64,000 bases of DNA, from the NCBI GenBank assembly GCA_977020255.1, contig CDROCS010001360.1, positions 558,001 to 622,000 on the forward strand, written 5' to 3'. The notes below the pieces were generated by a model. The model worked only from the letters and a program-made list of their open reading frames with translations. It was not told the DNA's origin and did not search any database. How positions within the stretch are numbered: the first letter of the stretch is position 1; each line of letters opens with the position of its first letter. Shown piece after piece: positions 32,077 through 43,269 of the stretch. A program made the translations under genes and the position numbers. The stretch is from Obrimoposthia wandeli (taxonomy: Eukaryota).

Positions 32077-32931
32077 ATGTATGCCTTAACTGTGAGTGAT
32101 ATATCAACATTAAGTATTGCAGTCACAGAAGAGATGGAAGAAAATAATTTACATAGTTTCTTAAGAAGCTCAATTATAAATAGTGAGTTACCAACTTCAA
32201 AAAATTGCTATTACTATTTTTATTATAATTCAAATGCATTCTCTTATGAAATAATCTTTTATGAGAAACTACAGAATAAAACTTCACTAGAACCTTTTTT
32301 ACTAATGAAACAATTTGCTACTATAGAAGATGACATAAAAGTACTTTTGTTAAAAAACTATTTTATGATTACACAAAATGGTAAATTACTTATATTGAAA
32401 AAAGTAAATAAGATTGACATGGATGAAATTCTTTTATATATACAACAAATATATAAAATAGATACATTTGAAGTTATTGATTTATCTAGTAAAACTATTG
32501 ATAATTTTTCCATTGAATCAGATGATTTAGAAACAAAACAGTTTTATCCTTTATTTCCAAATAAATCATTCTATTATTTTTTAGGATTTGTACTAAGTAC
32601 ACTAATTATTGTAATTGTATTATTATATATAGAGACTATTCAAAAAACAAAGACTAAAATTTTTCCTTCTTCATCAATTAATCTCCAATATATTTCTCAT
32701 AACAAAGTAATTCATGAAATAGTTGCATTATTCAAAGAGATTAAAGAAAACAAGATACGAATTGAAAAAATGAGTTATTTAAATAGACGAATGAAAACAA
32801 CTTTATATAGTAAAGAACAGTCAAAACTCTTAGACTTTGTAAATAGATATAATCAAAAAATTAAAGTAAAAACATTGAGATACAATGAGGACAAGAAACA
32901 ATACGCTATGGAGATCACTCTTGACTATTAA
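32077..32931 (+). CDS. Putative T2SS/T4P alignment protein (PilM/GspL-like cytoplasmic part, TM, PilN-like part)
   Basis: One central TM; short C-terminal domain ending YAMEITLDY; first gene of the gspE/F operon. Family call is inference. Confidence 0.55.
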   Translation: MYALTVSDISTLSIAVTEEMEENNLHSFLRSSIINSELPTSKNCYYYFYYNSNAFSYEIIFYEKLQNKTSLEPFLLMKQFATIEDDIKVLLLKNYFMITQNGKLLILKKVNKIDMDEILLYIQQIYKIDTFEVIDLSSKTIDNFSIESDDLETKQFYPLFPNKSFYYFLGFVLSTLIIVIVLLYIETIQKTKTKIFPSSSINLQYISHNKVIHEIVALFKEIKENKIRIEKMSYLNRRMKTTLYSKEQSKLLDFVNRYNQKIKVKTLRYNEDKKQYAMEITLDY

Positions 32932-33589
32932 AGAACGATTTGAACAATATAATATAAAAGATAAAGTATTATTATATCTAATCGTTTTGATGGTAAATTG
33001 CTTAGTATATATTTTTTATGAGAATTTATTGAAGGTTTTAAGTCTAGATACATCTCCAGTCTATAAAAAGGTTATTAGTCCTATATCCAAAATAAAAAGA
33101 TTATCTGATTTAGAGTTAATGAACTATTTTACTGTAAAGTCTAAAAAACATAAACTTTCTGCCATTGAAATGAAAATATCTCAAAGTCATATTTATTTTA
33201 AAGGGATAGGTCTTTTTGTGAATGTAATACCTTTTTTAAATGCAGTTGAACAAAATTTTAGATTACAACGATTTGAGATAACTTATAATGAGCATTTAGA
33301 AGTAACTATCAATGTGAATAAAAAATACTACAATACTTCTATATCCCCAATAGTTGCTTTTCAAAATATTTTAAACCCTTTTGTAATAAACAATCATCAG
33401 AAACTACCATCATTAAAGGAAATAAAAATTACTGCAATTTTAGATACGGAAATTTTAGTAAACAATGAATGGTATAAAACAGGTGAAAGAATACGACACC
33501 ATAAGATTCTTTCTATATATAAAGACAAAGTAATATTATTAGATACAAAACTGAATAAAAAAATAGAAAGAAGAATTAATTATGAATAA
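32885..33589 (+). CDS. Putative T2SS/T4P protein (TM, PilO-like and C-terminal PilP/MshK/CtsX-like domain)
   Basis: N-terminal TM; IKITAILDTEILVNNEWYKTGERIRHHKILSIYKDKVIL beta-domain pattern. Confidence 0.55.
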   Translation: MRTRNNTLWRSLLTIKERFEQYNIKDKVLLYLIVLMVNCLVYIFYENLLKVLSLDTSPVYKKVISPISKIKRLSDLELMNYFTVKSKKHKLSAIEMKISQSHIYFKGIGLFVNVIPFLNAVEQNFRLQRFEITYNEHLEVTINVNKKYYNTSISPIVAFQNILNPFVINNHQKLPSLKEIKITAILDTEILVNNEWYKTGERIRHHKILSIYKDKVILLDTKLNKKIERRINYE

Positions 33590-34979
33590 ATTACTTGAAT
33601 ATCATATTGACTATTCGTTATCTTTGAATATACCCAAAGAGATAATAAATAAATATAAAATATTACCACTAAAGAATCAGGACTTAAGTATATTACTTGC
33701 AACTTCAAACATAGAGCAAGATACAGAAGAATTAAAAACTATATTCAATAAACCTATTCAATTTCTTTATATAAATGATCAAGAACTAAATATGGAATTA
33801 CAATATTTAGAATTTAAACAAGAACTTTATCATTTGTCCATGCAGTCATTACATAATATGAATAAAAATAGTGAAAACTCGTACATTATAAGTTTTATGG
33901 AAGTACTATTCTCTTTTTGTATACATCATAATGCAAGTGATATTCATTTTGAAGCTGTAGATAGTAGTATGTTAATTAGATTAAGAATTGATGGCGAATT
34001 AAATCAAATATTTCGTTTTGATATAAAGTTATTTGCATTAATCAGTAGTATAGTAAAGTACTTTGGCAATCTTGATATATCTCAAAAAAGAATTCCTTTA
34101 AACGGTAGATTTTCAAAAGAGATTGATAATAGTATGTATGATATGAGAATTTCTACTATGCCAACCATTTATGGGGAGTCCATAGTTTTACGAATTTTGG
34201 ATAATGGAAATATACAAAAAGACATTCATAATATTGGATTTGAGGAAAATACATTAAATATAATAAAGAAAACTCTTCGTTTAAATCAAGGATTAGTTTT
34301 GGTTACAGGTCCAACAGGTAGTGGAAAAACTACTAGTTTGTACTCTATGATTAATACACTCAATACTAAAAGAAAAAAAATTATAACTATAGAAGACCCT
34401 GTCGAATATAAGATAAATGGAGTAATGCAAGTAAATATTAATGATGAAATTAATTTAAATTATCAGACAGTATTAAAAAATATTTTAAGACAAGATCCAG
34501 ATATATTGCTCATCGGAGAAATTAGGGATATAGAATCACTGCAAATTGCTATACAAGCATCTTTGACTGGTCATCTAGTCATTGCCACATTACATACAAA
34601 TAGTGCATTAGAGACAATTACACGGCTTAAAGATTTAAAAGCAGAATCATATTTAATTGCAAGTACATTAAAAATGATTTTATCTCAAAGACTATTACGT
34701 GTTTTATGTGATGAATGTAAGGTTACAACAAATGAAATAATTGATCCGAGTTTAACAGGGTGTTTAAAATGTGATTATAAAGGTTATAAAAATAGACAAA
34801 TTATAGCTGAGGTATTAGAAGTAGACTCAGAGATATCAGAGATGATTAGTAATAATAAATCAATGTTTACTATTCAAGAATATTTAGAAAAGATACAGTT
34901 TAAAAATTTAAAGCATAATGGGATGAAACTAGTTAAAGAAGGTAAAACAACATTAGAAGAATTTTACAGTAAGGTGTAA
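33582..34979 (+). CDS. gspE: GspE/PilB family secretion ATPase (CtsE-like)
   Basis: ASDIHFE, GPTGSGKT, TIEDPVE, LIGEIRD, GHLVIATLH, Cys4 motif. Confidence 0.95.
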   Translation: MNKLLEYHIDYSLSLNIPKEIINKYKILPLKNQDLSILLATSNIEQDTEELKTIFNKPIQFLYINDQELNMELQYLEFKQELYHLSMQSLHNMNKNSENSYIISFMEVLFSFCIHHNASDIHFEAVDSSMLIRLRIDGELNQIFRFDIKLFALISSIVKYFGNLDISQKRIPLNGRFSKEIDNSMYDMRISTMPTIYGESIVLRILDNGNIQKDIHNIGFEENTLNIIKKTLRLNQGLVLVTGPTGSGKTTSLYSMINTLNTKRKKIITIEDPVEYKINGVMQVNINDEINLNYQTVLKNILRQDPDILLIGEIRDIESLQIAIQASLTGHLVIATLHTNSALETITRLKDLKAESYLIASTLKMILSQRLLRVLCDECKVTTNEIIDPSLTGCLKCDYKGYKNRQIIAEVLEVDSEISEMISNNKSMFTIQEYLEKIQFKNLKHNGMKLVKEGKTTLEEFYSKV

Positions 34980-34987
34980 TTTTTATT

Positions 34988-36175
34988 ATGAAATTTAAAA
35001 TAATATATCAACAGAACAAAAGAGATAAAACAATTATTTTAGAAGCAGATAGTCTAGTAGCCCTAAAAAAGAGTGATAATTTTCCTTCAAATATTATCAC
35101 TGTAAAAGAGGTAAAAGAATTTAATTTCGATATCTTAATTAGAAGAAACTCTAAAAAAGAGGTGTATGAATTATTCACACAACTAGATATGATGTTAAGT
35201 GCAAATTTAACTTTTAGTGAAGCAATTGATCTATTGTTAGATTCTCTACAAGAAAAGAGAATAGAAGAAGTATTAAAAGTAATCAAACAATCACTTTCCT
35301 CATCCGTATCCTTAACTAAATCACTAGATAAATATAAATCTTTTTTAGGAGAGACAAGTTTATTATTTTTACAGCTTGGTTTTGAAAATGGAAATATAAA
35401 AGAATCAGTTCATTCTTTAGTTGAAATGTTAAGTGAAGATATAAAAAGTAGAGATAGTCTTAATGAAGTGATGAGGTATCCTCTGATTTTAGTAACTTCT
35501 CTTTTTATATCTATAGGTATGATTTTTTTATATGTTTTACCAAATTTTGAATTTATATTTACCTTATTAAAAGACGAAATTCCTTTTTCTACATATATAT
35601 TAATCAGTATAAAAAATATTTTATCTCAATATTGGATTCTTATTTTATTGAGTTTATTTTTCAGTACATTTATTTTCTTTTCTATAATAAAAAAGTATAA
35701 ATATACTTTTGATAAATTTTTATTATTATATATTCCTATATTTAGCAAAATGATTCAAGACTATTACTATTATAGATTGTTCTTATCTTTATCTATAATT
35801 GTTAAGTCAAAGTACCAATTTCAAGTTGCAATATCAAATAGTAAAAATGTGGTTACTAATTTATATGTACAAGAAAAGTTACATAATGTATTAATTAATA
35901 TTCAAAACGGATATTCTATATCTGAAGCATTTGAAATTAGTTATCTTTTTGATAGGTTAACAATGAAGTTATTAAATACAGCAGATAGTACAAATAACTA
36001 TGAGTATATTTTATCAGATATTACAACTCAATATAAAAAAAGGTTTCACAAGAGCCTGAAGAACTTTTCTTCTACAATCGAACCAATACTTATATTAGTC
36101 ATTGCTAGTGTTGTATTATGGCTTATATTAGCCATAATGTTGCCTATTTGGAATCTAGGTGCGGTTATAAATTAG
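34988..36175 (+). CDS. gspF: GspF/PilC family inner-membrane platform protein (CtsF-like)
   Basis: LFTQLDMMLSANLTFSEA, MRYPLIL, TIEPILIL...LAIMLPIW. Confidence 0.93.
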   Translation: MKFKIIYQQNKRDKTIILEADSLVALKKSDNFPSNIITVKEVKEFNFDILIRRNSKKEVYELFTQLDMMLSANLTFSEAIDLLLDSLQEKRIEEVLKVIKQSLSSSVSLTKSLDKYKSFLGETSLLFLQLGFENGNIKESVHSLVEMLSEDIKSRDSLNEVMRYPLILVTSLFISIGMIFLYVLPNFEFIFTLLKDEIPFSTYILISIKNILSQYWILILLSLFFSTFIFFSIIKKYKYTFDKFLLLYIPIFSKMIQDYYYYRLFLSLSIIVKSKYQFQVAISNSKNVVTNLYVQEKLHNVLINIQNGYSISEAFEISYLFDRLTMKLLNTADSTNNYEYILSDITTQYKKRFHKSLKNFSSTIEPILILVIASVVLWLILAIMLPIWNLGAVIN

Positions 36176-36182
36176 AAGTTTT
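36038..36182 (+). repeat. gspF 3'-end repeat, copy 1 (the functional gene end)
   Basis: 36038-36175 matches 40871-41008 at 115/138 nt (manual count); the last ~55 nt plus AAGTT also match 37416-37474. Confidence 0.9.
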
Positions 36183-37320
36183 TTATAATGTATCGAGTAC
36201 TTCTCCCACTTGTATCTTCTTTTTGTTTAATACAATTTTTTTCTAAGAGTTCACTTATATCTCGGGAAGCTGTAGCTGGAGTTGTATCTGCTATTGTGAT
36301 ATATTTCTTTTTACTTAAATCTCCTATAAAATTTTCACTTCCAATATCTAAAATTTTGTTGAGTACTTTAGTTTGTCTTGCGTTTAAATTACTATTTTTA
36401 TGCAGATCCCAAAATTTTGTTTTATCTATAATATAATTGAGAGATTTACTAGCTTCAAGAAGTGATTTATACAATGTATTAAAAAACCACTCACACCAAA
36501 AAGTTATATTTAAAGGGTCTTGATTTTTAATATATCCAGTTGTTTGCTCCAGAGCATTGTAGTATCCTTTACGATCCTCATTTATACTTTTTGACATCGT
36601 ATAGAGTTTTGAAAAAGAAGAATTTTCTATTTGAGAAAGAACCATATCTGTTATAGCTCTTGCAATTCTTCCATTTCCATCATCAAGTGGATGTATAATA
36701 ACAAACCATAAGTGAGTAATAGCCGATTTTATAAGTGTTGGGGGAGTATTATTATACCATTGTATAAATCCATCCATTTCTTGTTCTAATCCATCTCTAT
36801 TAGGTGCTTCATAATATACTGTTTCTTTATTGTAGTTTGTTGATACTATTTGCATTAAGCCATCGTCTCTAAATGTACCTACATTTATTTTATGAAAGTT
36901 ACTATACCCTTTTTCAAACATCAACCGATGCCAAGTAAATATTTTGTCCAATGAAAATTTTTCATTATAGTTTGTATTTGCATCGATAAGTATATCTACA
37001 TAATTATCTTCTTTTATTTTATGATTATAATGGGTATCATCTTCCAGTCCAAGTTTCTTTTTTATAGACGATCTTACACTATATCTATTGAGTACTTCTC
37101 CTTCAATGGCACAACTTGATATGATCTCATTTTCAAGGGCATTTACTTGTGTTTGTTTAATATTATCCGCATCCATAAGACTTAAAAATGCGATTAGTTT
37201 TCCTTGCTCAATCGTAATCTTTTGAATTAAAGGATCTAATATATTTCTATCATAAGTAAAGTTTGGATAGTTTTCATATTCCCATATCCATTGGGGTTGC
37301 TTTGTAATAGTATTTTTCAT
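36172..37320 (-). CDS. Fic family protein (DUF4172 + Fic + C-terminal HTH)
   Basis: QWIWEYENYPNF N-terminus; HPLDDGNGRIAR Fic motif; TTPATASRDISELLEK HTH. Confidence 0.93.
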   Translation of the reverse strand: MKNTITKQPQWIWEYENYPNFTYDRNILDPLIQKITIEQGKLIAFLSLMDADNIKQTQVNALENEIISSCAIEGEVLNRYSVRSSIKKKLGLEDDTHYNHKIKEDNYVDILIDANTNYNEKFSLDKIFTWHRLMFEKGYSNFHKINVGTFRDDGLMQIVSTNYNKETVYYEAPNRDGLEQEMDGFIQWYNNTPPTLIKSAITHLWFVIIHPLDDGNGRIARAITDMVLSQIENSSFSKLYTMSKSINEDRKGYYNALEQTTGYIKNQDPLNITFWCEWFFNTLYKSLLEASKSLNYIIDKTKFWDLHKNSNLNARQTKVLNKILDIGSENFIGDLSKKKYITIADTTPATASRDISELLEKNCIKQKEDTSGRSTRYIIKNF

Positions 37321-37336
37321 ACATATATTTTAACTT

Positions 37337-37404
37337 AAATGATACGCATAGTCAATATAATCATCTCATAAATGATACGATATATTTCTGTAATCGTATC
37401 ATTT
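37337..37404. promoter_or_regulatory. Putative operator upstream of fic
   Basis: AAATGATACG at 37337 and 37370; perfect 11-bp inverted repeat AAATGATACGA-N13-TCGTATCATTT (37370-37404). Confidence 0.7.
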
Positions 37405-37415
37405 TCAAATATTTG

Positions 37416-37520
37416 CTTATTTTAGTGATAATACTCCCTATTTGGAATCTAGGCGCAGTTATAAATTAGAAGTTTTAAATTTTCTCTACTACTTCTGATT
37501 TTTATAAGAAAAAGTAAATA
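37416..37520. repeat. gspF 3'-end repeat, copy 2, fused to a degenerate clpA 3'-end copy
   Basis: Plus strand encodes LILVIILPIWNLGAVIN*; after AAGTT the minus strand encodes FTFSY-(1-nt gap)-KSEVVEKI*, versus ClpA FTFAYTKLEVEEKV*. Confidence 0.88.
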
Positions 37521-37643
37521 TTTTTTTATACACGAGATGATCGGTCAAAACAATTATTTCTAATATTAATAAGTGAAAACATTAGTATATAATACATAAT
37601 TAAGTACAATAATCATACTACATTAAAGAATTTAAGGTTTATA

Positions 37644-40600
37644 ATGAATATTTCAATATTACATTTAAGTGATATCCATCTGAAGAGTGAAAATGATTCA
37701 ATTTTTGAAAAAAAAGATTTGATTAATAATGCAATAAAGAATAAAATTTTACATGTTGAATATTTATTTATTGTAGTTACCGGTGATATAGCAAACGCAG
37801 GCTCTGAAGTAGAATACGATAGTGCAAAGACTCTTCTTCTATATATTAAAGCTAGATTATTAGAATATAAAAGTACTTTAAAAGTAGAGTTTATTGTCGC
37901 ACCAGGTAACCATGATTGTGACTTTACAATAAAGAATCCATTAAGGGATTTGACAATTAAATCCTTATCTAATAATACTTTGGATCTCAAAGAAGTTGGG
38001 GATGAGATTATTGATCAATGCACAATGATTCAATCAAATTTTTTTAATTTTAGGGATTCCATAGAAAATAAAGATTCTATAGATTCTAATTTAAGTAATA
38101 AAGTATTTAAAAAATATAATTACCTTATTGAAGGAAAAAAAATATCATTTAATGCATATAATCTTGCATGGATGTCTCAACGTCATGAGCTGCAATCTGA
38201 AATATTTTTTCCTTGTTTCTTATTTAAAGAGAAGCTAATTAAGGAAAGTGGAGAAAATGATTTAAATATTACTATCTACCATCATCCTCTTCACTGGGTA
38301 CACCATAGCAATTTAAAGAATCTTAAAGAATTAATTAATATATCATCTAATATAGTGCTAAGCGGACATGAACATTCATCAATTGAACATAGTGAATATG
38401 ATCAAGTTAGTAAAACTACTCAATACATCGATTCACCTGCATTGCAAACTAACAATCATAATGAAAGTGCATTTAAATTACTAGAAATTGATATGGAAAG
38501 TGGAGATGAAAAAATATATGATTTTGTATGGGATAAAGATACTTCAAAATATACAGAGTCAGAAAATAAAAATAATATAACATTAGCAACATGCACAAAG
38601 CATTTTCCGATGAAGGAAGAGTATATTAATAAAGTTAATAATGATGGTATAAAAATTAATCATTCTTATAAATCAGATGTTTATCTTGAAGACCTATTTG
38701 TATATCAAGATATAGAGGATGTTAGGGATACAAACCTAGCCGATACTAATAATGCATCAAAATTTAAGGACTTTATGACTATTCAACGATCCATATTTAA
38801 TCACACAAGCTTTATCAGAAGGAAACATGGTATTGAAACATCACTAAGAATATTTACTAATAGAGCATAAGCAAAATGGAAGAATACCAATTTATATTAA
38901 TGGAAAAGATATTAAGGTTAAGGATCACACTAATGAAAGAATTAACACTTTAATTGAGAAATCATTTTTAAAACAATATGAAGAAGAAAATTTAACCGAT
39001 TTTAAACAAGAAGATAAATCAAATATTTTAATTATTATTGATGACTTATCATATGAAGTTAATGGTTTATTTTTTCAGTAAATGTGGTCAAACGATGAAG
39101 AAGTTCAAATTTGTAATATTGTAGAAATACACCTCTTGAAAATATTTAAAAAGCAACAGATCTTGTCTCATACCAGTCTAGAACTTGAATCTCTAAATGA
39201 TGATTTATTTGGAAAATCAATGTTAGAGTTTGATATATATAAGATTACGGAATTTGGTCATAAATTAAGGGATAAATTAATTAGACAATGGGTTCTTCTT
39301 GGTAGAGAAAATACTGTAAGCGCTCAAGAATTACATACGGAGACTGTAGAAAAAGCAAAAATTATCACAACAACTTTAGGTTATAATATTGTTCCTTCTT
39401 ACCCTATCTATATGCTTACTTTATTACAGTCAATGGAAAGTAATAATACAAATACTTTAAGTAAAAGTACCTATGGTCATTATTATAGCTATTTAATTAC
39501 TGATTCTTTAACTAGAAATGGTATTGATAAACAGGATTTAGATACATATTTTTCATATTTAGAAAAGTAATTGATAAGCAAAAAGAGATTTTAGTATTAA
39601 TAATGATAAATAGCTCTGATATTGATTTAAAATGTAGGGCATTGATGACTTTCACGATATTTGGAAATAGTAAAAAAGAATTACAAGCTAAAATGAAACA
39701 ATATTATTTATAAATAAATATCTTGACGGTTATTTGAGAATATAAAAGAGCAACTAACTAAAATTAATGATTATAATATTATTTCTTGATATTGGCTAAG
39801 TGGCTTTTAGAAAATAGACTTAAGATGAGAAATTATTGATTAATTGTAAAAATACCACGAACGCCAATTTGGAAATATACTAATGTTTTTGATTCATCAT
39901 ACAAATACTAATTATGTATTGACTTTATTGTTAAATGCATCAAAAAAAGTTTTTTCTGAGGTTGATGAGTTTGGATTTAAAGATGAAGAATTAGTAAAAA
40001 TAAATCTTTCTGTTTTAGATGAAAAAGAAGTAATAGAATTGGATGATGTAACACCTGAGCAAGCAAGGGAAAATTTTTTAACTTTACATTTTATTGAAGA
40101 TAAAGAACTCAAAACTCTGAACAACTAAAACCTATAAAAGATAGCAGCTGGAAGCCGATAATAAATATTAGATGATAGATATTGATTCAGAACTGAAACT
40201 TAGATTAGATTGCAACTTAATTTAGCATCAAAAATTGCTGATATATTAGGGGAAATTTCCAAAAACTATTATGGTTCTCTAGACGGTGATGTAAAACAAG
40301 AATTAATTAGAGAAACATATTCTTTAACACTCAGATCAGTTAATATGTTTGTAAAGAACTTTGAAGAACATCATGAATTAATAGTACAGGCAATTGATGA
40401 ATTACTAGAGAAGAAAGGCTATAATACTCAAGATAAAATGGAATTAACTTCTAAAAAGTTTGTATTTAATATTCTTTCTCGATTGACGGAAGGATTTATT
40501 TCGAAATTGTCTAAAAATATTGCATCAAAGAACCTACTTCCTATATATAAAGATATTGCGGATGATGAACCTAGTAATAAAGCGATAAGAATTATTAATA

Positions 40601-40827
40601 ATGCTATAGAATTGGATTTTCCGAATGGACTAAAAGATTCTACTATTACTCATTATTATGAGTTGAAAGGAAATTATTTAGCACAAGCAACACTTAAAAA
40701 ATTAGTTATTGATCATCTTCATATGTTTCATACTGATCACGATATAAAGGATAGATTCATGGAAAAATTTGAACTTAATCAAGGAAGTAAACAAGGAATA
40801 TTAATTAAATCTAACAAAATTAGCTAG
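37644..40827 (+). pseudogene. Decayed metallophosphoesterase-STAND (P-loop NTPase) fusion gene
   Basis: Intact phosphoesterase motifs HLSDIH, TGDIA, PGNHD, HHP, GHEH. Then out-of-frame pieces: eroded Walker A-like KHGIETS, Walker B ILIIIDD, VPSYPIYMLTLLQSME, YYFLILAKWL, NILMFLIHH and a helical C-terminus (ORFs 39082, 39883, 40210). Confidence 0.82.
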
Positions 40828-40850
40828 TTAAATATATTTGGTTATTTAAA

Positions 40851-41013
40851 GGATATTCCCTACAATATAAAAAAGGCTTCACAGGAGTTTGAAGAACTTC
40901 TCTTCTACAATCGAACCAATGCTTATCTTTATAATATCATTGGTCGTATTGTGGCTTATATTAGCGATAATGTTACCTATTTGGAATTTAGGAGCGGTTA
41001 TAAATTAAAAGTC
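40851..41013 (+). repeat. gspF 3'-end repeat, copy 3 (displaced gene fragment)
   Basis: 40871-41008 translates KRLHRSLKNFSSTIEPMLIFIISLVVLWLILAIMLPIWNLGAVIN*, 38/45 aa identical to the GspF C-terminus; no start codon. Confidence 0.92.
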
Positions 41014-43269
41014 TTAGACTTTCTCTTCTACTTCTAATTTAGTGTATGCAAAAGTAAATTCATTTTTTGTAAAATCTATTTTTACAGTACCACCATCTTT
41101 TAATTCTCCAAAAAGAATCTCATCTGTAAGTGGTATTTTAATTTTGTCACTAATTACTCTTTGTAATGGACGTGCGCCCATAAGTTTATCGTAACCTAAT
41201 CTTGCCAACTCTTTTTTTGCTTTCATTGAAAGTGAGATTTGGATATTTTTGTCTGATAAACTATTTTCTAAATCTTTAATAAATTTTGTAACAATTTTGA
41301 TTAAAATTGGTTCTGTAAGTGAGATAAATTTAACTGTAGCATCAAGTCTATTTCTAAACTCTGGTGCAAAGAATTTTTTCACAGCTTTGTCTTCATTGAT
41401 TCCATCATCTTTTGCAAATCCCATAACACTAGCTTGAGTTGCACCTAAATTTGATGTCATAATAAGTATTACATTTTGGAAGTCTGCTTTTGTACCATTG
41501 TTATCTGTTAATGTTGCATTGTCCATCACTTGTAGTAATAAACTCATTAAATCTGGATGTGCTTTTTCTATCTCATCTAGTAGTAAAACTGTGTGAGGGT
41601 GTTTTTTAATAGCTTCTGTTAATAAACCACCTTTTTCATATCCTACGTAACCAGCAGGTGCACCTATTAGACGACTCACTGTATGAGCTTCACCATATTC
41701 ACTCATGTCGAATCTTTCGAAGTGGATACCCATAACACCAGCTAATTCTTTAGCAACTTCTGTTTTCCCTACACCAGTGCTTCCTGTAAATAGAAAACTT
41801 CCTACAGGTTTATTTTCAACACCCATACCGGCGCGGTTTATCTTAATAGCTTTAACTATAGTTTCTATTGCTAAGTCTTGTCCAAATACTCTTTTTTGTA
41901 AGTTACTTTGTAGCTTTTTTAGAAGAGATAAATCTGATGATGTAGCAGTTTTTGGTGGAATTTGAGCAATACTCGAAATTGTTTTTTCTACATCTTTAGC
42001 AGTGATTCTAATATTCTTTTTAGATTTTTTCTCTAATTTTATAGTTGCCCCAACTTCATCAATAACATCAATGGCACTATCTGGTAAAAACCTATCATTA
42101 ATAAATTTTTTACTTAATTCAGCTGCTAATTGCAAACTTTCATCACTATATGTAATCCCATGGAACTCTTCATATTTATCTTTTAAACCATGTAGAATAA
42201 TCACACAATCTTCAATTGATGGTTCTTGTATATCAACTTTTGCAAATCTTCTACTAAATGCTTTGTCTTTTCCAAAGTCGTTTCTATATTCTTCATACGT
42301 TGTTGCACCAATCACTCTTAATTTTCCACTACTGAGCATTGGTTTTAAGATATTTGATGCATCCATTGTACTACCACTAACTGCACCAGCACCTACAACG
42401 GTATGTATTTCATCAATAAATAAAACTGCATTTTTCTTTTTACTTACTTCTTTTAATACAGCTTTTAATTTCTTTTCAAAATCTCCACGGTATTTTGTCC
42501 CAGCTAGCATTGATCCCATATCCAGAGAATATACTTTTGCATCAATTAAAAAATCAGGTACTTCACTGTTCGCAATAGCTAAAGCTAAACCTTCTGCAAT
42601 AGCAGTTTTACCTACACCTGTTTCTCCTAATAAAATAGGATTGTTTTTCTTTCTTCGTGCTAAAATCTCAATTACTCGATTGATCTCTTTTGTTCGATTG
42701 ATAACAGGATCAATTTTACCATCCAGTGCTAGAGCTACAAGTTCTTCACTATTTTCTTCTAATGGTGTCTCATCTTTGAGTTTCTTTTTATCAAGTTTTT
42801 GAAAATCAATCTCTTCAAACTCTGCATCCTCTTCACCTTGAGATTCTCCATGACTGATTTCCTCTAATATATCTATTCTCTCTAAACCTTGTTCTTGTAA
42901 TAAATATGTACAATATGCAGATTCATCTTTTAATATATATACAAACATATCTTCGACAGTAGATTCTGATTTTCCAGATAATGATGAGTGTGATATCATT
43001 TGTTCAATAGTATGTGTTAATGTTACAGTTTCTAATGGATCTTCATTAACCATCTCTTCTGGATATTGTGGAGTGTTTTTTAGAATATAATCTTTTAATC
43101 GCGCATTTAAAGAATCAATATCCATTTCCATTTGTTTAAATAGTTCGGCTATGGATTTTGATTTGAGTAGGTATACAAAAATATGTTCAGTTGTGATATA
43201 TTCATGATTATTGGCACGGGCATAATTTACTGCATCTGTAAATACTTTTTGTAATTTTTTACTTATCAT
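41014..43269 (-). CDS. clpA: ATP-dependent Clp protease ATP-binding subunit ClpA
   Basis: Two AAA+ modules (GETGVGKT, GSTGVGKT), FIDEIH, LLDEIEKAH; follows clpS. Confidence 0.97.
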   Translation of the reverse strand: MISKKLQKVFTDAVNYARANNHEYITTEHIFVYLLKSKSIAELFKQMEMDIDSLNARLKDYILKNTPQYPEEMVNEDPLETVTLTHTIEQMISHSSLSGKSESTVEDMFVYILKDESAYCTYLLQEQGLERIDILEEISHGESQGEEDAEFEEIDFQKLDKKKLKDETPLEENSEELVALALDGKIDPVINRTKEINRVIEILARRKKNNPILLGETGVGKTAIAEGLALAIANSEVPDFLIDAKVYSLDMGSMLAGTKYRGDFEKKLKAVLKEVSKKKNAVLFIDEIHTVVGAGAVSGSTMDASNILKPMLSSGKLRVIGATTYEEYRNDFGKDKAFSRRFAKVDIQEPSIEDCVIILHGLKDKYEEFHGITYSDESLQLAAELSKKFINDRFLPDSAIDVIDEVGATIKLEKKSKKNIRITAKDVEKTISSIAQIPPKTATSSDLSLLKKLQSNLQKRVFGQDLAIETIVKAIKINRAGMGVENKPVGSFLFTGSTGVGKTEVAKELAGVMGIHFERFDMSEYGEAHTVSRLIGAPAGYVGYEKGGLLTEAIKKHPHTVLLLDEIEKAHPDLMSLLLQVMDNATLTDNNGTKADFQNVILIMTSNLGATQASVMGFAKDDGINEDKAVKKFFAPEFRNRLDATVKFISLTEPILIKIVTKFIKDLENSLSDKNIQISLSMKAKKELARLGYDKLMGARPLQRVISDKIKIPLTDEILFGELKDGGTVKIDFTKNEFTFAYTKLEVEEKV

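What the first reader, a model, noticed from the sequence alone, without database searches (positions are those of the whole stretch)
36038..41016. Triplicated gspF/clpA junction acting as a tandem cassette-capture site without an integrase
Seen: the 3' end of gspF occurs three times: in the gene (to 36175), at 37416-37469 and at 40871-41008, each followed by AAGT(T/C). Copy 3 matches the gene at 115/138 nt; 12 codons differ only synonymously and 7 differ non-synonymously, mostly conservatively, so it evolved as a real gene end. Copy 2 continues into a degenerate copy of the convergent clpA 3' end. Each interval between copies holds one foreign-looking gene (Fic; phosphoesterase-STAND). Inference: two successive single-crossover integrations of circles carrying a gspF/clpA junction (attP) from related genomes, each regenerating intact gspF and clpA ends. 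No recombinase lies in the array, so this could be a trans-mobilised or homology-driven (e.g. transformation-fed) cassette system at a DNA-uptake-type gene. Established: integrative islands often target gene 3' ends and supply replacement fragments. I do not know of a report for this site.
Basis: partly seen in the sequence, partly recalled or inferred. Interest (0 to 1): 0.88.

Follow-up and report, generated by a model that had tools for sequence, protein, structure and literature searches.

The report
Integrase-free defence-gene hotspot with gene-end scars
The tight junction between a pilus/secretion gene (gspF) and clpA in this Arcobacteraceae genome is a strain-variable insertion spot now holding two anti-phage-type genes, and the three copies of the gspF end are most likely leftover scars of recombination with DNA from related strains, an ordinary kind of hotspot with unusually legible scars.

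Summary
The gspF 3' end occurs three times, with 115/138 identities and 12 synonymous versus 7 non-synonymous codon differences. Copy 2 carries a decayed clpA end.

Seven related lineages have gspF and clpA abutting, 4-15 nt apart (empty site). Others carry different cargo there: TonB receptor plus PepSY, a WD40 protein, a 199-aa gene, or the same phosphoesterase-STAND gene without Fic. Metagenome contigs show empty and filled forms side by side.

The cargo here is an intact SoFic-like Fic gene and a dead PDC-S60-type phosphoesterase-STAND gene.

No recombinase lies in the array, in the syntenic flanks, or beside gspF in the six other lineages with readable cargo or downstream genes. No viral contig carries the gspF end.

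Leftover lengths are scattered: about 157, 54, about 44, 13 and 0 nt, plus one internal 45-nt piece. Fic lost its own last codons at the joint. The whole four-gene gspE/F cluster, not only its tip, is a divergent allele, while copy 3 matches other strains' working alleles at 90-92%.

Best reading: an element-free, homology-driven hotspot whose repeats are scars rather than att sites. Circle integration or a recombinase acting in trans is not excluded.

An earlier scan note (s1-229612) had flagged the broken gene.

The parts
32077..36175 (+). Hypervariable four-gene T2SS/T4P-type cluster (two unnamed genes, gspE/ctsE-like ATPase, gspF/pilG-like platform protein)
   Evidence: Pfam T2SSE 3e-119 and T2SSF 6e-27. 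NCBIfam hits lie below equivalog cut-offs. Amino-acid identity to L029 is 44/39/72/72%, while the flanking era and clpA genes are 93/92%.
34988..36175 (+). Intact gspF. It is a divergent allele: 75-80% nt identity to all relatives along its whole length, with L021 nearest.
36017..36180 (+). Copy 1: the functional gspF 3' end plus the AAGTT spacer
36172..37320 (-). Cargo A: intact DUF4172-Fic gene (SoFic-like; motif HPLDDGNGRIAR at residue 209). Its last two codons and stop are formed by the AAGTT spacer and the gspF end.
   Evidence: Pfam DUF4172 5e-25 and Fic 2e-14. PADLOC SoFic 4e-33. NCBIfam SoFic scores only 37.9 bits against a cut-off of 550. C-termini compared; motif.
37321..37405 (-). 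Fic upstream module with a 10-bp perfect hairpin (37372-37381 / 37393-37402). Homology to Fic loci elsewhere ends at 37405.
   Evidence: Arcobacter cloacae plasmid match reaches query 1406, which is window 37405; joints at 37405
37415..37474 (+). Copy 2: a 54-nt gspF end with stop plus AAGTT. It is the leftover of the gene end that preceded the Fic insertion.
   Evidence: 91% to the L026 allele
37475..37530 (-). Degenerate clpA 3' end remnant. A still more eroded version is shared with L021.
37644..40827 (+). Cargo B: PDC-S60-type metallophosphoesterase + STAND NTPase gene, a pseudogene (one frameshift and many in-frame stops)
   Evidence: Pfam Metallophos. PADLOC PDC-S60 1e-32 / 1e-24 / 2e-27 on three pieces. 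Pieces align to P0237 residues 1-384, 399-624 and 718-1027. P0237 carries Metallophos + nSTAND_NTPase4.
40852..41013 (+). Copy 3: a gspF end remnant of about 157 nt plus the AAGTC spacer, abutting the clpA stop. It has the allele type of the L013/L026/L028/L029 group.
41014..43269 (-). Intact clpA (conserved flank), followed by clpS and a Na+/H+ exchanger

Best explanation
This is an element-free variable-gene hotspot (here a small defence island). It sits at the tight convergent junction between a hypervariable gspE/gspF (cts/pilG-like) cluster and the conserved clpA gene. Imported DNA from related strains recombines by homology on one side and joins illegitimately on the other (homology-facilitated illegitimate recombination or an equivalent). 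gspF and clpA are only 4-5 nt apart in the nearest relatives, so only products that keep a complete gspF and a complete clpA survive. A join that lands inside the resident gene therefore leaves a leftover gene end next to the cargo. Once a cargo is bracketed by gspF sequence, ordinary double-crossover homologous recombination can carry it, scars included, into other strains and place it upstream of cargo already present. That builds the tandem array.

Order of events: the phosphoesterase-STAND cassette came first (now dead), then the Fic gene.

Shown: the repeats, their allelic origins, empty and alternative alleles, scattered joint positions, absence of a recombinase, and cargo identities.

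Inferred: the recombination route (transformation, RecA plus illegitimate joining) and the order of events.
For: Empty sites occur in seven lineages, with the gspF stop 4-15 nt from the clpA stop: L002/L014, L003, L011, L013, L015, L029-31, L039. Other cargo occupies the same place elsewhere: TonB receptor + PepSY_TM between gspF and clpA in L036-38, a WD40 protein in L028, an unknown minus-strand gene in L026/27, a 199-aa gene in L032, and the same PDC-S60 cassette without Fic in L021. Remnant lengths differ in every case: about 157 and 54 nt here, about 44 nt and 0 nt in metagenome contigs (joints 37405->40966 and 37405->37475), 13 nt fused as the PepSY stop in L036, and an internal 45-nt piece in L032. 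Fic lost its native last codons at the joint. The window's gspF is about 75-80% nt identical to relatives throughout, with no break at -157 or -54, and the whole cluster is hypervariable between flanks that are over 90% identical. Copy 3 is 90-92% identical to functional alleles of other strains, with 7-8 synonymous and 2 non-synonymous codon differences. No recombinase domain occurs in any ORF of the array, and the flanks are syntenic core genes. Depth in runs X1 and X3 shows cassette-bearing forms as a minority beside abundant clpA, and contigs join a gspF end directly to clpA. Cargo hits defence models. Framework: hotspots lacking mobile elements, with recombination at flanking core genes, are over-represented in transformable species (PMC5635113). 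HFIR is described in competent bacteria (PMC3240628). An Arcobacteraceae species is naturally transformable and has an adjacent ctsE/pilG pair of the same sizes (PMC8308473).
Against: No recombination event was observed directly, and competence of this organism is unknown. Two lineages (the window's copy 3 and the L032 remnant) have their left boundary at nearly the same place, about -157 to -167. Purely random joining does not predict that. It could reflect the edge of the conserved block of gspF, one old event, or a defined site. Most evidence for other alleles comes from short metagenome contigs. The joints rest on single contigs with short sides (19-44 nt). Tyrosine recombinases are reported elsewhere in this genome by unchecked scan notes, so action in trans cannot be excluded.
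Confidence: 0.55

Rival explanations
1. Campbell-type insertion. Circular DNA carrying a copy of the gspF/clpA junction plus one cargo gene integrates by a single RecA-mediated crossover within the conserved last 160 nt or so of gspF. This duplicates the junction each time. Recombination between the repeats regenerates circles.
For: The phosphoesterase cassette is bracketed by a repeat of about 215 nt covering both the gspF end and about 55 nt of clpA, which is what one crossover with a junction-bearing circle would give. The last 160 nt or so are the best-conserved part of gspF between alleles, so they are the natural homology block. The similar left boundary in the window and L032 fits a block of fixed extent. 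L021, which carries the same cassette, is the nearest relative of the window's gspF along the whole gene, as expected if only the tip was exchanged when Fic came in.
Against: No circle junction appears among the contig joints. The one 'goes back' joint (40851->36017) starts copy-1-like from its first base, which a crossover within the repeats cannot produce. Remnants of 13, about 44 and 0 nt and the truncated Fic end need additional illegitimate events anyway. The origin of the first circle is unexplained. A linear fragment with the same repeats gives the same product by double crossover.
Confidence: 0.2
2. The array is a remnant of site-specific integrative elements: decayed islands, or integrase-less elements flanked by att sites and mobilised in trans (CIME-like accretion). 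These would target the gspF 3' end, with the repeats serving as attL/attR.
For: Direct repeats of a gene's 3' end flanking foreign genes are the classic signature. All copies share the terminal motif ending in the AAGT spacer, and a 13-nt piece of it also survives in L036. Fic relatives lie on Arcobacter megaplasmids, one of them two genes from a tyrosine recombinase. Unchecked scan notes report tyrosine recombinases elsewhere in this genome.
Against: No integrase lies beside gspF in the six other lineages with readable cargo or downstream genes, nor in the array or its flanks. Repeat boundaries differ between the two cassettes on both sides (-54..+5 versus -157..+55). The identical stretches between copies are only 11-17 nt and coincide with conserved codons. 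The cargo units are single genes with no element hallmarks, and one is cut inside its coding end. No viral contig or phage carries the gspF end.
Confidence: 0.12
3. In-situ duplication. Each cargo was inserted once, with a local duplication of the target. The copies later diverged because the working gspF was replaced by other alleles through homologous recombination, and the clpA-side remnant was patched from empty-site donors.
For: The cluster is clearly subject to allele replacement. In L032 the remnant is 94% identical to its own gene, as expected for a young local duplication. In run X1 a contig has the same cassette-to-remnant joint but a different remnant allele, which suggests the remnant sequence is overwritten while the joint stays.
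Against: This needs an unspecified mechanism producing 59-nt and 215-nt target duplications. It is hard to separate from the best explanation, of which it is partly a variant.
Confidence: 0.1
4. Assembly artefact: mis-joined strain variants in a metagenome-derived assembly.
For: Independent contigs break inside copies 1 and 3, and no single contig spans the whole array.
Against: An independent contig spans Fic, copy 2, the cassette and the start of copy 3. Contigs from other studies join the cassette end to a gspF remnant and Fic to a remnant. L021 independently shows gspF followed by the cassette's left end.
Confidence: 0.03

Closest known systems
[quoted passage not shown] 2017, PMC5635113); 'minimal mobile elements' of Neisseria (discussed in PMC3082526)
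   Same: A fixed interval between two conserved genes holds different whole genes in different strains, including an empty state. No integrase or transposase is present. One flanking gene shows elevated diversity. The family includes a naturally transformable species.
   Different: Here the two flanking genes are convergent and almost touching, so insertions left visible duplicated gene ends of varying length. Such scars are not part of the published definition. Transfer by transformation is not shown for this organism.
Core defence hotspots (Pseudomonas aeruginosa cDHS, PMC10250203; E. coli defence-island hotspots, PMC10121019)
   Same: Defence-type cargo (SoFic-like, PDC-S60-like) sits between conserved core genes and varies between strains.
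   Different: This hotspot is much smaller (one or two single-gene systems). Other lineages carry non-defence cargo at the same place (TonB receptor/PepSY, WD40). Anti-phage activity is untested.
Homology-facilitated illegitimate recombination during natural transformation (summarised in PMC3240628)
   Same: There is one homologous anchor and one non-homologous joint. Joint positions are variable, and resident sequence is duplicated or deleted at the joint. No dedicated recombinase is needed.
   Different: This is inferred from scars only. Microhomology at the joints could not be assessed because donor sequences are unknown.
Tandem accretion of ICE/IME/CIME elements at the 3' end of a gene (e.g. 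Streptococcus fda-type sites, reviewed in PMC5704250; ssrA islands of Dehalococcoides, PMC3146451)
   Same: Repeated copies of a gene's 3' end separate successive foreign segments, and the gene stays intact.
   Different: Those arrays depend on a tyrosine or serine recombinase and have a constant core. Here no recombinase was found at the site in any lineage, and the boundaries vary.

Membership tests
Element-free HGT hotspot between core genes | Same two conserved flanking genes in relatives, in the same order | tested here: met
   The era...gspF side and the clpA-clpS-Na/H exchanger side are syntenic in L029, L011, L015, L002, L003 and L039.
Element-free HGT hotspot between core genes | Gene content of the interval varies between strains, including an empty state | tested here: met
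   Seven empty lineages, at least five different cargos, and mixed depth and joints in metagenomes.
Element-free HGT hotspot between core genes | No integrase, transposase or other mobility gene in the interval | tested here: met
   Pfam on every ORF of the array. Called genes of L036-38, L028 and L032 show none next to gspF.
Element-free HGT hotspot between core genes | Raised recombination or diversity in flanking core genes | tested here: inconclusive
   The gspF side is strongly hypervariable (39-72% aa against over 90% in neighbours), but clpA is not. No formal recombination test was run.
Defence island / core defence hotspot | Cargo belongs to known or candidate anti-phage systems | tested here: met
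   PADLOC SoFic 4e-33; PDC-S60 on three pieces, 1e-24 to 1e-32. The Fic protein fails the NCBIfam SoFic equivalog cut-off (37.9 vs 550 bits), so it is 'SoFic-like' only. Activity was not tested.
Site-specific integrative element or CIME array | Direct repeats (attL/attR) with one constant crossover core at every boundary | tested here: not met
   Repeat extents are -54..+5 and -157..+55. Other alleles have 13, about 44 and 0 nt. Shared identical runs are only 11-17 nt within conserved codons.
Site-specific integrative element or CIME array | A cognate recombinase-bearing element at the same site in some genomes | tested here: not met
   None beside gspF in the six other lineages with readable cargo or downstream genes. 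No gspF-end pattern in IMG/VR. No phage match. The sample is small.
Site-specific integrative element or CIME array | Excised circular form | tested here: inconclusive
   No circle joint among Logan contigs of four runs. Contigs drop rare forms, and raw reads were not available.
Integron cassette array | IntI integrase, attI and attC sites bounding cassettes | tested here: not met
   No integrase. The boundaries are gene-end copies, not attC-type imperfect palindromes.
Xer-exploiting elements (IMEX) at dif | Site lies at the replication terminus / dif | tested here: inconclusive
   GC skew shows no terminus-type switch at 36-41 kb beyond gene-strand effects. The dif sequence of this clade was not available for comparison.

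The most novel reading that the evidence does not exclude
The leftover gspF ends are not inert scars. They act as portable homology arms: any single gene bracketed by gspF-end sequence becomes a cassette that RecA can insert, stack in tandem, or remove at the end of the (probable) DNA-uptake operon, using nothing but transformation. That would be an integron-like array with no integrase. The near-coincident left boundary (about -160) in two lineages would mark the edge of this arm.
Probability: 0.2. Interest if true: 0.6.

Novelty: new member of a known kind. Interest (0 to 1): 0.35.

Why it matters
The locus gives an unusually readable record of how single defence genes enter and stack in a chromosome without any mobile-element machinery. 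Where two essential or important genes leave no intergenic room, each insertion has to carry or leave behind a spare gene end. Those spares preserve the alleles of the strains involved and the order of events. The locus could serve as a natural test case for the idea that transformation plus host recombination drives hotspot turnover in Campylobacterota. It does not reveal a new class of mobile system.

Tried and rejected
1. Searched for a phage or plasmid attP mimic. Three degenerate patterns of the gspF end found nothing in IMG/VR. blastn of the array found nothing in phages and only distant Fic genes in plasmids.

2. Tested the terminus/dif (Xer) idea. The GC-skew profile shows no terminus at the site.

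3. Looked at the genomic contexts of the closest Fic homologues (79-88% aa, L022-L025). None lies near gspF, so no donor junction was found.

4. Searched for close relatives of the phosphoesterase piece. The word-index search is limited by length and found nothing above 41%. The exhaustive search gave a 50% full-length relative in an unrelated, phage-like context.

5. Looked for a recombination breakpoint at -157 or -54 inside the window's gspF. There is none; the gene is uniformly divergent.

6. Considered the 'goes back' joint 40851->36017 as a circle junction. Rejected, because copy 3 homology really starts at about 40852 and the contig is copy-1-like from its first base.

7. The genome-contig scan returned only 12 loci and did not include the window's own species, so no within-species catalogue could be made.

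8. The chimeric-pattern test of copies 1 and 2 against L021 had only one informative site and was left undecided.
Full report
WHAT IS THERE

ORF listing and Pfam scans give this order:
- gspE-like ATPase, 33582-34979 (+)
- gspF-like platform protein, 34988-36175 (+)
- a DUF4172-Fic gene, 36172-37320 (-)
- a metallophosphoesterase ORF, 37644-38870 (+), followed by unnamed ORF pieces up to 40827
- clpA, 41014-43269 (-), then clpS and a Na+/H+ exchanger

The gspF 3' end is present three times. A degenerate 33-nt pattern of it matches exactly three times, against none in 100 shuffles.

Copy 3 versus the gene is 115/138 nt, with 12 synonymous and 7 non-synonymous codons, and frame and stop are intact.

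The tail after copy 2 (37475-37530) is a decayed copy of the clpA end. No control out of 5000 reached its alignment score.

Alignment A1 shows that copy 3 really begins near 40852, with two single-base gaps in its first 25 nt.

CARGO

The Fic protein hits the PADLOC SoFic model (4e-33) over nearly its full length. It keeps the catalytic motif HPLDDGNGRIAR. It is far below the NCBIfam SoFic equivalog cut-off, so I call it SoFic-like.

The three larger downstream pieces hit PADLOC PDC-S60. They align to residues 1-384, 399-624 and 718-1027 of P0237, a 1034-aa relative. P0237 carries Metallophos plus nSTAND_NTPase4.

The gene is dead here. It has one frameshift near 38800-38850 and in-frame stops at 39079, at seventeen positions between 39568 and 39847, and at six between 40126 and 40201. 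This agrees with the earlier scan note s1-229612.

THE SITE IN RELATIVES

In L002/L014, L003, L011, L013, L015, L029-31 and L039 the gspF stop and the clpA stop are 4-15 nt apart. In the nearest relatives the spacer is AAGT or a near variant. The ancestral state is therefore a tight convergent junction with no free intergenic DNA.

Other lineages carry something else directly after gspF:
- L036-38: a TonB-dependent receptor and a PepSY_TM protein, 3.4 kb, followed by clpA.
- L028: a WD40-repeat protein.
- L026/27: the end of an unidentified minus-strand gene.
- L032-34: a 199-aa gene, then genes of another region.
- L016-20: lactate permease, with no clpA nearby, probably a rearrangement.

L021 has the gspF closest to the window's (80% aa). 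Its gspF is followed by the same sequence that follows copy 2 here, namely the eroded clpA remnant and the left end of the PDC-S60 cassette, with no Fic. So that cassette predates the Fic insertion and is linked to this gspF allele lineage.

POPULATION DATA

Logan contigs of four public runs were laid on 35900-41300.

One X3 contig of 4110 nt runs from Fic through copy 2 and the whole cassette into copy 3. The inner part of the array is therefore reproduced by an independent assembly.

Depth over the cassettes is far below depth over clpA. In X1 it is about 1-13 against 100-175. In X3 it is about 24-45 against 80-90.

Contigs join a gspF end plus AAGT directly to the clpA stop (joint 37473->41014; depth 28.5 in X1 and 7.0 in X3). 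This indicates that empty and filled forms coexist.

Two more joints show other architectures:
- In X2, the Fic upstream region is joined through three other letters to a gspF remnant of about 44 nt.
- In X1, the Fic upstream region is joined through six other letters straight to the clpA-like tail, with no gspF remnant.

These rest on single contigs with short sides and are suggestive only. No joint of the kind expected for an excised circle was listed. The single 'goes back' joint (40851->36017) is explained by a strain whose remnant allele resembles the window's gene from its first base.

WHERE THE COPIES COME FROM

Copy 3 is 90-92% identical to the functional gspF ends of L013, L026, L028 and L029, but only 83% to the window's own gene. 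Against those alleles it differs by 11 nt, giving 7-8 synonymous and 2 non-synonymous codons against L013 and L026. It is therefore a barely decayed end of a common allele type.

The window's working gspF is about 75-80% nt identical to every relative along its entire length, with L021 nearest throughout. There is no change at -157 or -54.

More broadly, the four genes 32077-36175 are hypervariable (44, 39, 72 and 72% aa to L029). The genes on either side are 92-94% identical. Allele replacement thus affects the whole cluster, and the gspF/clpA junction is its right-hand edge.

JOINT POSITIONS

The two cassettes are bracketed by repeats with different limits on both sides. For Fic the repeat runs from -54 to the spacer. 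For the PDC-S60 cassette it runs from about -157 to about +55 into clpA.

Elsewhere the leftover is:
- about 44 nt or absent;
- 13 nt in L036, where the gspF tail plus spacer now supplies the stop of the PepSY gene;
- in L032, an internal 45-nt piece (about -165 to -122), 94% identical to that genome's own gene, lying after the 199-aa gene.

At the gspF-proximal side of Fic the joint lies inside the last codons of Fic. Homologues end two to five residues differently, and here the last two codons and the stop come from the spacer and the gspF tail.

Homology of the Fic module to plasmid-borne relatives ends at 37405. That is the same point as the metagenome joints.

Identical runs shared by the copies are 11-17 nt and lie in conserved codons.

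RECOMBINASES AND ELEMENTS

None of the array's ORFs has a recombinase domain. The flanks are syntenic core genes. No called gene beside gspF in the six other lineages with readable cargo or downstream genes is an integrase.

No IMG/VR contig carries the gspF end. The array has no phage match.

Fic relatives at 67-70% nt occur on Arcobacter and Aliarcobacter megaplasmids. One lies two genes from a tyrosine recombinase, so Fic belongs to the mobile gene pool.

Unchecked scan notes mention tyrosine recombinases elsewhere in this genome. I could not examine them.

GC skew gives no sign of a terminus or dif site here.

INTERPRETATION

The data fit a hotspot that turns over by host recombination on imported DNA. 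Published work describes such hotspots:
- One-sided homologous plus illegitimate joining is documented in competent bacteria (PMC3240628).
- Aliarcobacter butzleri is naturally transformable and has an adjacent ctsE/pilG pair of 453 and 396 aa (PMC8308473). These sizes resemble the 465/395-aa pair here. Orthology was not tested.

Because gspF and clpA nearly touch, any imprecise join has to leave both genes whole. The survivors are those in which a spare gene end is left beside the cargo. Its length depends on where the join happened to fall.

Once cargo is bracketed by gspF sequence, a linear fragment can be inserted by an ordinary double crossover: left arm in the gene body, right arm in the gene end. 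This works in front of whatever a recipient already has, and it yields exactly the tandem arrangement seen.

I put this reading at about 0.55. The other readings are:
It explains the 215-nt repeat around the older cassette and the similar -160 boundary in two lineages. It has no direct support and still needs illegitimate events for the other alleles.
- A recombinase acting in trans on att-like repeats (CIME-like accretion), about 0.12. It is weakened by the variable boundaries, the truncated cargo gene and the absence of any cognate element.
- Local duplication followed by allele replacement, about 0.1. It overlaps with the best reading.
- Artefact, about 0.03.

NOVELTY

The phenomenon belongs to a described class: element-free hotspots, minimal mobile elements, and core defence hotspots (PMC5635113, PMC3082526, PMC10250203, PMC10121019). 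What is special is the legibility of the scars at a junction with no spare DNA.

I rate it a new member of a known kind, with interest 0.35. The more novel possibility is that the gene-end remnants serve as portable homology arms for integrase-free cassette stacking. It is not excluded (about 0.2).

Noticed in passing
window 39047-39159, 39562-39866, 40080-40214: In the X3/X4 contigs these three stretches of the dead PDC-S60 gene are replaced by 75, 288 and 97 other letters, while the stretches between them are identical. The length differences (36, 15, 36) are all multiples of three. The three stretches coincide with the parts of the window's gene that hold the in-frame stops. This could be a mosaic of an intact and a decayed allele.
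   Followed up: partly
window 32077-33589: The two genes upstream of gspE have no family hit and are only 29-47% identical to their positional counterparts in relatives whose neighbouring genes are over 90% identical. These are extremely fast-evolving or often-replaced components of the pilus/secretion cluster.
   Followed up: partly
L011:6972-10780: In the single-cell genome closest by flanking genes, the two unnamed genes, gspE and the first 131 codons of gspF are missing. About 3 kb of other sequence takes their place, and the rest of gspF has a frameshift. The cluster is being lost there although the gspF/clpA junction is intact.
   Followed up: no
L036:5895-5935: The PepSY_TM cargo gene ends in a 13-nt piece identical to the gspF tail plus spacer, so a leftover of the old gene end now provides its last codons and stop. 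The clpA of this lineage is 8 residues shorter at its C-terminus.
   Followed up: partly
L032:11985-12030: A 45-nt internal fragment of gspF (about -165 to -122 from the stop), 94% identical to the same genome's gene, lies after a 199-aa gene and before a chemoreceptor gene. Synteny with clpA is broken exactly there.
   Followed up: partly
window 37372-37402: A perfect 10-bp inverted repeat with an 11-nt loop lies at the outer edge of the Fic upstream region. It is followed by TTTT on the + strand and is conserved with a plasmid-borne Fic locus up to 37405. It may be a terminator or an operator belonging to the Fic module.
   Followed up: no
L014:9011-10141: The genome of the Arcobacter sp. 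15-2 type has an empty gspF/clpA site but carries a 63% identical Fic gene about 2 kb beyond the other end of the same pilus/secretion cluster.
   Followed up: no
L026:9875-9930 and L027:2566-2621: Two independent assemblies of the same gspF allele both stop 55 nt after the gene, as expected where strains diverge at a hotspot.
   Followed up: no
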